Origin: Salisapilia sapeloensis CBS 127946
Lineage: Eukaryota; Protista; Oomycota
Length of the DNA: 64,000 bases
Direction: 5' to 3'
Assembly: GCA_023334545.1 (NCBI GenBank)
Contig: JAADVB010000090.1
Span: 1,511-65,510 of the forward strand
In this document: positions 29,117-31,405 of the stretch, piece by piece
Layout of the letters: every line of letters starts with the position of its first letter
Position numbering within the stretch: the first letter of the stretch is position 1
The notes under the pieces: generated by a model
What the model saw: only the letters and a program-made list of their open reading frames with translations
Databases searched by the model: none
Told to the model about the DNA's origin: nothing
Position numbers and translations under genes: made by a program

Positions 29117-30090
29117 TTAAAGTTCCCATCGGTTTGGACAGCTCAGACACATGACGATAATGCGAGTCCGGTCTACGACAGCTTTCCGGCGCCATTGTCG
29201 GTATCTCGTACGCCACGATCCGCAACTTCGACATTCAAACAAGTCTGTTTCAGTAAACCCTTCTAGTGCTCGATCTTGACGCATGACTTCATGTGTTCGC
29301 TTGCGAATCCACGCTTTACGCTGTTGCACTAAGACCGGATTGGCCAGCTCACTAGCAGACAAGCGGACGAGATCAGACGCTGGGAGGCTACCTGATAACA
29401 CCCGATCACGCAGATGCGCGTTACGAGCATCGCGAAGATTGAAAAGGAGTTGCCGAGCCTTTTGGTTGTAAGCTTTCGCCAGCGAATAGCTACATGTAGG
29501 GTCAGATGCATATAGACAGGTACGAATGTACACGGAAAATGTTACTCTAAGCCATGGATGTCAAACAGCGCTTCTTCAATCTGGTGCGAGACGGATATAG
29601 CATCCTGTGTAAAGGGTTGAAGAACTTCGTAGACGCGTTCACGGAATTTACGGCGAGACACTATGATGATGTTAAAAACATGTACTACAAATCCTCTATA
29701 CAAGATAATATACCGGTACTCATCGCAAGACTCCACGACTTACATACTCGTCCGACTTGCGTGAACTTTAAAATGTTCACCAATACTTCTTGCGGCAAGA
29801 GTGCTGCAAAGGATTGATTTGCTGGTTTTGCAGGTGACGGATTCAAAGTAGACTCGGTGACACTAGTACTAGAAGATTGGCCTGTTCCGACTGTACAATA
29901 GAATAAGCAATGCCTCCAACAAACGAAAACTTGGTAGGAACGAACCGGATAGTCCGAGCTCTTCCTCGAGCTCTAGCGCCCACGTCGTATCGTCTTCTTC
30001 CTCGCTTTCAACGTCTTCTCCCTTTGAAATAACTTCCTGTCGCCTGTCACGTCCGAGACAGCGAGCTTTATTCGCGCGTGGAGATAGCAT
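29117..30090 (-). CDS. F-box-like + TFIIS central domain + TFIIS-type zinc ribbon fusion protein (4 exons, 269 aa)
   Basis: Exons 30090-29946, 29890-29714, 29660-29546 and 29489-29117 join in frame over GT-AG introns of 55, 53 and 56 nt (810 nt total). Encodes LLPQEVLVNILKFTQVGRVCKSW (F-box-like), IEEALFDIHG...AYNQKARQLLFNLRDARNAHLRDRVLSGSLPASDLVRLSASELA (TFIIS_M) and TDLFECRSCG...CLSCPNRW (zinc ribbon). Confidence 0.85.
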
Positions 30091-30225
30091 GAGCTCTAGC
30101 CTCTCCGACGCCGGTCGCTCGCGGTTGTGAGCATGCCGGCATGCAGGAAACTCTTCCAGGTAGCACGAAGGTCGTTCCGATGGTTTCTCGAAGGTTGCGC
30201 GACAATACCTATCGACACTAATCCA

Positions 30226-31289
30226 ATGGACGAGTATGAAGAGTACTTTGATGCGATGCTCTTCGTAAATGACGAGTAGGGTCCTTTATGATGTATCAAT
30301 ATACTCTGATATTCATCCTCTGTTGTGTGTTGTTGTAGTTACGTTGAGCAGACGTTTGAGATCGGTCAAGACTGCCAACAGACCTTGCTGGCGTCATCCT
30401 CGGCATCCGTAGGTTGCATGTTGTAGTTTGCATGAACGAGTATTGATGCTAGGACCTTATAGACAGATCATGACTTGACAGGGCAGATCGTATGGCCTGT
30501 GTCTATCTTTCTTGCATGGTGAGTACCTGGTTTTGCATCTTCTTGTCGACATGCTGACGTCTGGGTAGGTTCATGTCATCTAAGAAAGAAGAATTGAAAG
30601 GCAAAAACGTCGTGGAACTAGGTGCAGGTGCCGGTCTTAGTGGTCTTGCTGCTGCTCAATACAGGTACATATTTACTATACTGCTGTCGTTCGAGTCCTA
30701 ATGATATAATGATAGTCATCGCACGGTCTTAACGGACGGTAATGATATTGTGTTGGACTTGCTTGAAAAGAATGCCAAGCAATACGCCATCAATCCAGAC
30801 GTACGTCCTAAAAGTTTGTTTCTTTATAACACAACTTACAAAGTATAACGATAGAAAGTTTCTGTTCTGCCGCTATTGTGGGGCGAATCAGCTAGTGTGC
30901 ATGCGTTTGAGGCAGCTTTCCAGGCCTCCGTGGACATTATCATCGGAGCAGACGTCGTCTGCTGGCCAAAGCTCGTCAAGCCATTGCTACAGACGATCAA
31001 GTACTTGATGCTGCGTCATCCACAGCCACTCACCTGTCGCTTCTACTGTGGATTTGTCTGTAGAGCCCAGTCGACGGAAGACTTGTTGTTCCAAGAAGCA
31101 AAGAGCTTTGGATTCAACGTCACTAGAATCGACGATGAAACATTCTTGCCATCTCCACGTCCAGAGCAAGTCGTATCTCATCGGGAACTGCAGCTCCTGT
31201 CTTTCCAATTAGATGCAAGCAAAAGCAATTGGGATGCTCCTGTCGAGTTCTCGGATGCAGAGCTCGATGGTCTCCAGACCGCTTGCTAA
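30226..31289 (+). CDS. Methyltransferase-16 family (METTL21/EFM-like protein lysine methyltransferase), multi-exon
   Basis: Spliced motifs: TDHDLTGQIVWPVSIFLAW, GKNVVELGAGAGLSGL (SAM motif I), VLTDGNDIVLDLLEKN, LLWG, DIIIGADVVCW. Start ATG 30226 (MDEYEEYFDAMLF). Confidence 0.9.
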
Positions 31290-31405
31290 TACATCAAATA
31301 CATCTTGCTTTTCATACTTCTTTCATAGCCTTTCTTATCCGTACTTGATTGCATCGATACAAATCGCAAGAGAAAACGTGGAACCGCAAGTGCGGCGACC
31401 GAGGC

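What the first reader, a model, noticed from the sequence alone, without database searches (positions are those of the whole stretch)
29117..30090. Hidden four-exon gene fusing an F-box-like motif to a TFIIS core whose catalytic acidic hairpin is missing
Seen in sequence: three short GT-AG introns join four exons in frame into a 269-aa protein. The layout is acidic N-terminus, LLPQEVLVNILKFTQVGRVCKSW (about 29726-29801, absent from the ORF track), TFIIS domain II/linker, then zinc ribbon FECRSCGSWRTRYRQWRRKAVVDRTRIIVMCLSCPNRW. Established knowledge: canonical TFIIS has QTRSADEPMT, whose Asp-Glu pair stimulates RNA polymerase II backtrack cleavage, and DE-to-AA mutants block cleavage dominantly. 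F-boxes bind Skp1 to recruit substrates to SCF ligases. Here RSADEP is replaced by RRKAVVDR and no TFIIS N-terminal domain is evident. Inference: a non-catalytic TFIIS mimic that binds arrested Pol II and couples it to an SCF-type ubiquitin ligase, or a cleavage antagonist. That would be a lineage-specific route for handling stalled polymerase. The F-box is shorter than consensus.
Basis: partly seen in the sequence, partly recalled or inferred. Interest (0 to 1): 0.85.

Follow-up and report, generated by a model that had tools for sequence, protein, structure and literature searches.

The report
F-box-derived, cleavage-dead TFIIS paralogue
This expressed four-exon oomycete gene belongs to an apparently undescribed protein family of stramenopiles and haptophytes that joins an F-box (shortened in oomycetes) to a TFIIS-like RNA-polymerase probe whose catalytic acidic tip is replaced by a conserved basic one, so it probably docks on RNA polymerase II without rescuing it and may hand it to a ubiquitin ligase.

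Summary
RNA contigs from four runs carry exactly the three proposed GT-AG introns. The spliced minus-strand gene (30090-29117) encodes 269 aa.

- **TFIIS part:** domain II, the linker and a four-Cys zinc ribbon are clearly TFIIS-like. The catalytic QTRSADEP hairpin reads RRKAVVDR.
- **Not decay:** about 69 database representatives share an xDR hairpin. They sit on one side of a well-supported branch, with all 99 DE-bearing TFIIS on the other. Named members are oomycetes, brown, yellow-green and synurophyte algae, and a haptophyte.
- **N-terminal motif:** it is a true F-box at family level. A family profile hits only F-box proteins in the PDB (Skp2 1.4e-6). A long-form model superposes on Skp1-bound F-boxes.
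- **Caveat for this gene:** in oomycetes and brown algae about seven residues (helix 2) are missing. The window's own motif scores below Pfam's threshold, and no F-box chain is among the 50 structure matches shown for the oomycete model. The motif is nevertheless as conserved as the TFIIS core.

Best reading: a non-cleaving binder of the Pol II secondary channel, ancestrally an SCF substrate receptor. Skp1 binding in oomycetes is open, and function is inferred throughout. I found no paper describing this architecture. The scan noted the same stretch once before (s1-303202).

The parts
29946..30090 (-). Exon 1. The start ATG is at 30090-30088. It encodes a non-conserved N-terminus followed by the acidic motif.
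   Evidence: RNA contigs cover it and reach at least 30171 upstream.
29947..30018 (-). Conserved acidic helix motif, residues 25-48 (EDVESEEEDDTTWALELEEELGLS).
   Evidence: Mean identity is 0.49 among 19 oomycete sequences, against 0.14-0.15 in the flanks. A similar acidic-hydrophobic stretch occurs in distant members. It is predicted helical at modest pLDDT.
29891..29945 (-). Intron 1, 55 nt, GT..AG.
   Evidence: Joint 29890|29946 is present in the contigs of X1-X4.
29714..29890 (-). Exon 2. It encodes a low-complexity linker followed by the F-box-derived motif.
29715..29801 (-). F-box-derived motif, residues 79-107 (LLPQEVLVNILKFTQVGRVCKSWSLAMST). Helix 1 and helix 3 are kept; helix 2 is replaced by a short loop.
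   Evidence: PF12937 scores 20.2 bits, E 5e-4, below the cutoff. hhalign of the oomycete motif against the long-form motif gives probability 96.5%, E 8.8e-10, with a 7-residue gap. Mean identity among oomycetes is 0.69. The model of ortholog P0003 shows helix-loop-helix.
29661..29713 (-). Intron 2, 53 nt, GT..AG.
   Evidence: Joint 29660|29714 is present in the contigs of X1-X4.
29546..29660 (-). Exon 3. It encodes the first half of TFIIS domain II.
   Evidence: It aligns with P0003 residues that match TFIIS_M profile positions 11-50. The exon alone gives no Pfam hit.
29490..29545 (-). Intron 3, 56 nt, GT..AG.
   Evidence: Joint 29489|29546 is present in the contigs of X1-X4.
29117..29489 (-). 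Exon 4. It encodes the second half of TFIIS domain II, the linker and the zinc ribbon. The stop codon is at 29119-29117.
   Evidence: TFIIS_M 2.4e-16. phmmer against human TCEA1 gives 2.3e-16 over domains II-III.
29126..29239 (-). TFIIS-type zinc ribbon (domain III), with CxxC at residues 232-235 and 260-263.
   Evidence: The ribbon alone matches human TFIIS domain III (1tfi) at 1.8e-5, while Rpb9 reaches only E about 1-3. Pfam PF01096 scores 12.4 bits, below the cutoff.
29168..29194 (-). Hairpin tip WRRKAVVDR, in place of VQTRSADEP.
   Evidence: Alignment to TCEA1. The RRKx[IV]VDR or RAGRxxVDR hairpin recurs in 63 of 69 non-DE relatives, and D and R are nearly invariant.

Best explanation
The gene encodes a member of a conserved family of TFIIS paralogues found in stramenopiles and haptophytes.

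Layout: an acidic N-terminal helix, an F-box, and then TFIIS domain II, linker and zinc ribbon. The F-box is complete in long-form members and lacks helix 2 in oomycetes and brown algae.

Shown here:
- The gene is spliced as proposed and is expressed.
- It has the TFIIS domain II-linker-ribbon build.
- The metal-binding Asp-Glu tip is replaced by a conserved basic tip (RRKAVVDR).
- The N-terminal motif descends from an F-box and is under strong constraint.

Inferred:
- The protein docks on RNA polymerase II as TFIIS does, with domain II on the Rpb1 jaw and the ribbon in the secondary channel.
- It cannot stimulate transcript cleavage.
- Its basic tip would favour contact with backtracked RNA or the active-site region.
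- Its F-box module, rigidly continuous with domain II, recruits Skp1-Cullin to the occupied polymerase, making the protein an SCF substrate receptor for Pol II.

In oomycetes this last step is the least certain, because the F-box is truncated.
For: - **Splicing and expression:**
- **TFIIS build:**, plus fold matches to TFIIS in Pol II complexes (7unc_O at 1.7e-8; Z 11-12).
- **Hairpin conserved, not decayed:**
- **One coherent group:** a branch with SH-aLRT 98 separates all 99 DE-bearing TFIIS from the 69 non-DE rows, which include the window.
- **F-box at family level:** 15 of 43 alignment rows hit PF12937 and 8 hit PF00646, with best E-values of 1.1e-9 and 5.2e-8. P0039 passes both cutoffs.
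- **F-box against solved structures:** motif profiles hit only F-box proteins at significant E-values. FBXO42 scores 1.7e-5, TIR1 2.7e-5 and Skp2 1.4e-6.
- **F-box fold:** the long-form model superposes on Skp1-bound FBXO22 at 1.8 A over 48 residues, Z 5.7.
- **Oomycete motif is homologous to the long form:**
- **Oomycete motif is constrained:** mean identity 0.69, against 0.15 in the flanks.
- **Rigid connection:** F-box helix 3 runs straight into domain II in both models. This is the usual F-box-then-substrate-domain order.
- **Precedent:** the archaeal paralogue TFS4, which has lysines at the ribbon tip, inhibits RNAP, and a TFIIS-TFS4 chimera inhibits Pol II (PMC5715097).
Against: - The window's own F-box hit is below Pfam's cutoff.
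- The oomycete-only profile finds no solved F-box.
- The oomycete model has a loop where helix 2 should be, and none of the 50 structure matches shown is an F-box chain.
- No tool here could test binding to Skp1 or Pol II, cleavage or ubiquitylation.
- One Asp remains at the tip, so a residual or altered catalytic role is not excluded.
- The target could be another polymerase.
- I did not verify that oomycetes keep a separate canonical TFIIS (one search did not resolve it).
- The spliced window protein has no single reference. Pfam was therefore run on exon pieces, and folding on the ortholog P0003, which is 56% identical.
Confidence: 0.5

Rival explanations
1. It is a pure secondary-channel antagonist or regulator, like archaeal TFS4 or bacterial Gfh1. 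It competes with canonical TFIIS or blocks the active site. In oomycetes the shortened F-box no longer binds Skp1 and serves as a structural cap or partner site on domain II.
For: - The tip is basic and non-DE.
- TFS4 provides a precedent.
- Helix 2 is missing, and no F-box fold match is shown for the oomycete model.
Against: - The L-P, E-V-L and W positions typical of F-boxes are invariant among oomycetes.
- The motif is as constrained as the TFIIS core.
- Long-form relatives have a full F-box.
Confidence: 0.3
2. The F-box controls the protein itself rather than a substrate. Skp1 or SCF binding would set the abundance of a TFIIS competitor, or form a non-SCF Skp1 complex, so that channel occupancy is gated by proteolysis.
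For: The evidence for F-box ancestry is the same as above. Some known F-box proteins work outside SCF or are themselves unstable; this rests on my own knowledge.
Against: No data here bear on stability. The rigid helix linking the F-box to the substrate-type domain is typical of substrate receptors.
Confidence: 0.1
3. The TFIIS-like module binds something other than Pol II, such as Pol I or Pol III, or another partner.
For: Domain III ribbons also occur in A12.2, C11 and Rpb9, and weak fold matches to those were seen.
Against: The ribbon and domain II are far closer to TFIIS than to Rpb9, A12.2 or C11. Domain II is specific to Pol II-binding proteins such as TFIIS, Bye1 and PHF3.
Confidence: 0.08
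4. It is a chance motif, an annotation artefact or a decaying gene.
For: The window protein's F-box and ribbon Pfam scores are below threshold.
Against: The spliced mRNA is seen in four runs. Orthologs occur in all the major oomycete groups sampled, with a conserved motif and hairpin.
Confidence: 0.02

Closest known systems
TFIIS (TCEA1 / Dst1), the eukaryotic transcript cleavage factor
   Same: It has domain II, a linker of similar length and a four-Cys zinc ribbon. The best sequence and fold matches are TFIIS bound to Pol II.
   Different: It has no domain I. The Asp-Glu tip reads Val-Asp within a basic hairpin. An F-box-derived module and an acidic helix sit where domain I would be. It falls on the far side of a supported branch from all DE-bearing TFIIS.
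TFS4 of Sulfolobus, a cleavage-factor paralogue turned RNAP inhibitor (PMC5715097)
   Same: It is a paralogue of the cleavage factor whose acidic ribbon tip has become basic. This is the likely functional analogue for a non-cleaving channel binder.
   Different: The origin is independent: TFS4 is archaeal, whereas this family lies within eukaryotic TFIIS. TFS4 has no domain II of the TFIIS_M type and no F-box. This family keeps a nearly invariant Asp-Arg at the tip.
F-box proteins, the substrate receptors of SCF ligases (e.g. Skp2, FBXO22, FBXO42, TIR1)
   Same: The LPxE[VL]L...VxKxW pattern lies N-terminal to a protein-binding domain. The family profile matches solved F-boxes, and the long-form model superposes on Skp1-bound F-boxes.
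   Different: The oomycete form lacks about seven residues (helix 2) and fails the Pfam cutoff. A TFIIS module has not been reported as an F-box protein's substrate domain in the papers I could search.
Elongin A (Elongin ABC-Cul5) and other Pol II ubiquitin ligases of the 'last resort' pathway
   Same: A cullin-adaptor box is joined to a TFIIS-related module in a protein that acts on Pol II. This is an analogy, drawn from my own knowledge plus the context of PMC3778974.
   Different: Elongin A carries TFIIS domain I and a BC box. This family carries domains II-III and an F-box, so it would reach the polymerase through the secondary channel.
Bye1 / PHF3 / SPOCD1 / DIDO TFIIS-like-domain proteins
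   Same: Domain II (TLD) is used as a Pol II jaw-binding module without cleavage activity. Bye1 TLD and PHF3 domain II are among the matches.
   Different: Those proteins lack the linker and the ribbon, and carry PHD and SPOC domains instead of an F-box.

Membership tests
TFIIS (transcript cleavage factor) | Central domain II (PF07500) | tested here: met
   Exon 4 scores 2.4e-16. The ortholog P0003 matches profile positions 11-110. Fold Z is 11-12 to TFIIS domain II.
TFIIS (transcript cleavage factor) | C-terminal four-Cys zinc ribbon (PF01096) | tested here: inconclusive
   The four Cys residues and their spacing are kept, and phmmer to 1tfi gives 1.8e-5. The Pfam score is 12.4 bits, below the 21-bit cutoff. 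The model shows a three-stranded ribbon.
TFIIS (transcript cleavage factor) | Invariant Asp-Glu at the hairpin tip (QTRSADEP) | tested here: not met
   It aligns as RRKAVVDR, with D replaced by V and E replaced by D. The same holds across the family.
TFIIS (transcript cleavage factor) | N-terminal domain I (PF08711) | tested here: not met
   No hit in any exon piece, nor in P0003 and the ten relatives whose own Pfam tables were listed.
F-box proteins | Match to F-box profiles above the curated cutoff | tested here: not met
   The window motif scores 20.2 bits against a cutoff of 24.3. Relatives P0039 and P0045 do pass, and the family profile hits Skp2 at 1.4e-6.
F-box proteins | Three-helix fold | tested here: not met
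   The oomycete ortholog model shows helix 85-92, loop 93-101 and helix 102-124, and none of the 50 matches shown is an F-box chain. The long-form P0044 has three helices and matches FBXO22 and FBXO42 at Z 5.2-5.7.
F-box proteins | Binding to Skp1 | not testable with these tools
   No complex prediction or experiment was available.
TFS4/Gfh1-type non-cleaving channel binders (functional class) | Acidic tip lost or replaced by basic residues in a cleavage-factor paralogue | tested here: met
   The tip reads WRRKAVVDR. The TFS4 description comes from PMC5715097.
TFS4/Gfh1-type non-cleaving channel binders (functional class) | Inhibition of, or lack of, cleavage stimulation | not testable with these tools
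   This needs an in vitro transcription and cleavage assay.

The most novel reading that the evidence does not exclude
A conserved SCF substrate receptor of stramenopiles and haptophytes probes the RNA polymerase II secondary channel with a catalytically dead, basic TFIIS ribbon. In this way it selects persistently backtracked polymerase for ubiquitylation. That would be a channel-sensing 'last resort' route unlike the Def1/Elongin, CSA, NEDD4 or ARMC5 routes known in yeast and animals.
Probability: 0.3. Interest if true: 0.85.

Novelty: new variant of a known kind. Interest (0 to 1): 0.7.

Why it matters
How cells decide that a stalled RNA polymerase II is beyond rescue is still open. Known ligases read the polymerase surface or its partners, not the active-site channel.

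A widespread protein that couples a cleavage-dead TFIIS probe to an F-box would give a directly testable candidate for a channel-reading degradation or inhibition pathway. It occurs in groups that include major crop pathogens and marine algae.

It would also be a eukaryotic parallel to archaeal TFS4. In addition, it shows that proteins currently labelled only 'TFIIS central domain-containing protein' form a distinct family.

Tried and rejected
- **Rpb9-like ribbon.** The RRK...CLSC resemblance to Rpb9, recalled from memory, was rejected. The ribbon matches TFIIS domain III at 1.8e-5, whereas Rpb9 reaches only E about 1-3.
- **Oomycete-only motif profile against the PDB.** No hit. This is why the F-box claim is made by descent only.
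- **Canonical DE-bearing TFIIS in oomycetes.** The query P0041 turned out to be red-algal and no oomycete appeared among the 120 hits listed. Cluster look-ups of the nearest DE-bearing hits gave green algae, Cercozoa, Amoebozoa and fungi. The question stays open.
- **Literature.** Searches for F-box with TFIIS, oomycete, Skp1 or Rpb1 degradation found no description of this architecture.
- **Protein-language-model look-ups.** They lean towards F-box clusters, but at lead-only scores of 0.88 and 0.70.
- **Synteny.** The Pythium oligandrum locus has a ThiF/E1-like gene upstream, not the methyltransferase seen in the window, so the gene neighbourhood is not conserved.
- The full spliced window protein could not be handed to Pfam, AlphaFold or the homology tools as one sequence, because it has no single reference.

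Full report
**Observation**

On the minus strand, an ATG at 30090 opens four exons: 30090-29946, 29890-29714, 29660-29546 and 29489-29117. They are joined by GT..AG introns of 55, 53 and 56 nt. Together they give 810 nt in frame and 269 residues.

Assembled RNA contigs from four public runs (two samples of one study) cover the gene at k-mer depths of about 100-225. They skip exactly 29490-29545, 29661-29713 and 29891-29945. There are no mismatches and no alternative joints. The splicing is therefore shown, not inferred. The contigs reach at least 30171, so 30090 is the only in-frame start ahead of the conserved part.

**What the pieces are**

The spliced protein has no single reference, so I scanned the exons separately.

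- Exon 4 matches TFIIS_M at 2.4e-16. It matches the TFIIS zinc ribbon only weakly (12.4 bits; cutoff 21).
- Exon 2 matches F-box-like PF12937 at 20.2 bits, E 5e-4 (cutoff 24.3).
- Nothing matches TFIIS domain I.

Against solved structures, exon 4 aligns over domains II-III of human TCEA1 (2.3e-16). In that alignment VQTRSADEP corresponds to WRRKAVVDR: Asp becomes Val, Glu becomes Asp and Pro becomes Arg. The ribbon alone is closest to TFIIS domain III (1.8e-5). Rpb9 reaches only E about 1-3, which disposes of an Rpb9-like reading I had considered.

**It is a family, not an oddity**

An exhaustive HMMER search with exon 4 found 1221 relatives. The best 150 fall into two kinds:

- proteins with QTRSADEP;
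- proteins with RRKx[IV]VDR or RAGRxxVDR hairpins, many of which also carry LPxE[LV]L upstream.

A quick maximum-likelihood tree of 168 C-terminal regions puts all 99 DE-bearing sequences on one side of a branch with SH-aLRT 98. The 69 others, including the window's protein, lie on the other side. This was the quick search, with few columns, so the inner branching is weak.

Full-length orthologs, 45-61% identical to the window protein over their aligned parts, occur in Phytophthora, Peronospora, Plasmopara, Hyaloperonospora, Pythium, Albugo and Achlya. A shorter database model from Lagenidium is 67% identical over the TFIIS part. All are labelled only 'TFIIS central domain-containing protein' or hypothetical, and only PF07500 is on record for them.

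More distant named members come from Ectocarpus, Ascophyllum, Tribonema, Mallomonas and the haptophyte Chrysotila. The Asp-Arg of the hairpin and the four Cys residues are nearly invariant across the family. The loss of the Asp-Glu pair is therefore an old, maintained state.

**The N-terminal motif**

Long-form members have the full F-box spacing (for example LPHEILCRILSFLSHAALVNTVFRV...). Oomycete and brown-algal members lack 6-8 residues between the first helix and the V-x-K-x-W helix.

Evidence at family level:

- Of 43 alignment rows scanned singly, 15 hit PF12937 and 8 hit PF00646. The best E-values are 1.1e-9 and 5.2e-8.
- P0039 passes both curated cutoffs and P0045 passes one.
- A profile of the motif from the whole family finds F-box proteins as its top 28 matches among solved structures: FBXO42 1.7e-5, TIR1 2.7e-5 and Skp2 3.3e-5.
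- The long forms alone give Skp2 at 1.4e-6 over the whole three-helix span. Of 35 matches, 33 are named F-box proteins.
- The oomycete motif profile aligns to the long-form profile with hhalign probability 96.5%, E 8.8e-10, and a 7-residue gap.

Evidence for the oomycete form on its own:

- The oomycete profile finds no solved F-box.
- Among 19 oomycete sequences the motif is as conserved (mean identity 0.69) as TFIIS domain II (0.64). It is far above the flanking linkers (0.14-0.15). L, P, E, V, L, G, R, W, S and A are invariant.

**Structure**

AlphaFold2 of the closest full-length ortholog, P0003, gave mean pLDDT 82, with most of residues 80-272 above 90. The model shows helix 85-92, a loop at 93-101, and a long helix 102-124 that runs directly into domain II. 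The linker and a three-stranded ribbon follow. Its best fold matches are TFIIS in Pol II complexes, the Bye1 TLD and PHF3 domain II. None of the 50 matches shown is an F-box chain.

A long-form member, P0044, gave pLDDT 80.5 and has three helices at 66-73, 78-88 and 90-116. That region superposes on the F-boxes of Skp1-bound FBXO22 (1.8 A over 48 residues, Z 5.7) and of FBXO42 (Z 5.2).

The family ancestrally carries a real F-box. The oomycete and brown-algal lineage keeps helices 1 and 3 and has lost helix 2.

**Mechanism**

Shown:

- the architecture;
- expression;
- conservation;
- loss of the catalytic pair.

Established knowledge:

- TFIIS domain II binds the Rpb1 jaw, and the ribbon enters the secondary channel.
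- The Asp-Glu pair is needed for cleavage stimulation, and its mutation gives dominant inhibitors.
- F-boxes bind Skp1.
- F-box proteins carry their substrate-binding domain C-terminal to the box.
- The archaeal paralogue TFS4, with lysines at the tip, inhibits RNAP, and a TFIIS-TFS4 chimera inhibits Pol II (PMC5715097).

Inference: the protein occupies the Pol II channel without rescuing the transcript. Its net-basic tip would suit contact with backtracked RNA. Through the F-box module, which is rigidly joined to domain II, it would bring SCF to the polymerase.

I put the whole chain of inference at about 0.5. The weak link for this particular gene is Skp1 binding by the truncated box. The main rival (0.3) is a pure TFS4-like antagonist in which the box remnant has another role.

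**Comparison and novelty**

- It is not a TFIIS in the functional sense. The DE pair and domain I were tested and are not met.
- By strict criteria it is not a Pfam-level F-box protein.
- It is a TFIIS paralogue by descent, and it belongs to a family that is F-box-bearing by descent.

Six literature searches found no paper describing F-box plus TFIIS domains II-III. I rate it a new variant of known kinds, with a distinct and testable functional hypothesis.

**Limits**

- No interaction, cleavage or ubiquitylation test was possible.
- A separate canonical TFIIS in oomycetes was not verified.
- The taxonomic range rests on the few named members.
- Folding was done on orthologs, not on the window protein itself.
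- The same stretch had been noted once before by this scan (s1-303202) with a similar reading. That is not independent evidence.

Noticed in passing
window 30232-31300 (+): The divergent neighbour, whose ATG lies about 140 nt from this gene's ATG, is a Methyltransf_16-type lysine methyltransferase (PF10294, 1.4e-5 on the 30573-30698 piece). One RNA contig (X1, 1761 nt) runs through both genes and shows a neighbour intron of about 30276-30338. Three database models (P0173, P0174, P0177) were flagged for a methyltransferase part: two carry PF10294 and the third is named a SAM-dependent methyltransferase. I did not resolve whether these are mis-merged models.
   Followed up: partly
window 30134-30143 (-), 5' leader: Two out-of-frame upstream ATGs (30143 and 30134) lie in the leader covered by RNA contigs that reach 30171. 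The first opens a short frame that overlaps the main start at 30090. This may be a uORF control.
   Followed up: no
window 29947-30018 (-): A conserved acidic, aromatic helix motif (DDTTWALELEEEL) precedes the F-box in oomycetes. Similar acidic-hydrophobic stretches occur in haptophyte members. It could be a docking motif for another transcription or repair factor. Its function is unknown.
   Followed up: partly
L001:2162-7023 (Pythium oligandrum): In P. oligandrum a 1017-aa ThiF/E1-like gene lies 170 nt upstream on the same strand as the ortholog. One database protein (P0011) merges a ThiF domain with the F-box-TFIIS part. This is either a coincidental neighbourhood or a mis-merged model.
   Followed up: partly
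P0053 / P0183 (metagenomic relatives): A divergent member has a textbook F-box (LLPDEVLVEIFARLDYSQLRVVGKVCRKW) but a different hairpin (AWRTRQQVERGE). It sits on a long branch next to the canonical TFIIS clade and may be an intermediate or a separate offshoot.
   Followed up: no
fold matches of model m832e14cd6693: The domain II region also matches the Pol II-binding IRI/KIX module of RECQL5 (Z about 6). This fits the known resemblance of that module to TFIIS domain II.
   Followed up: no
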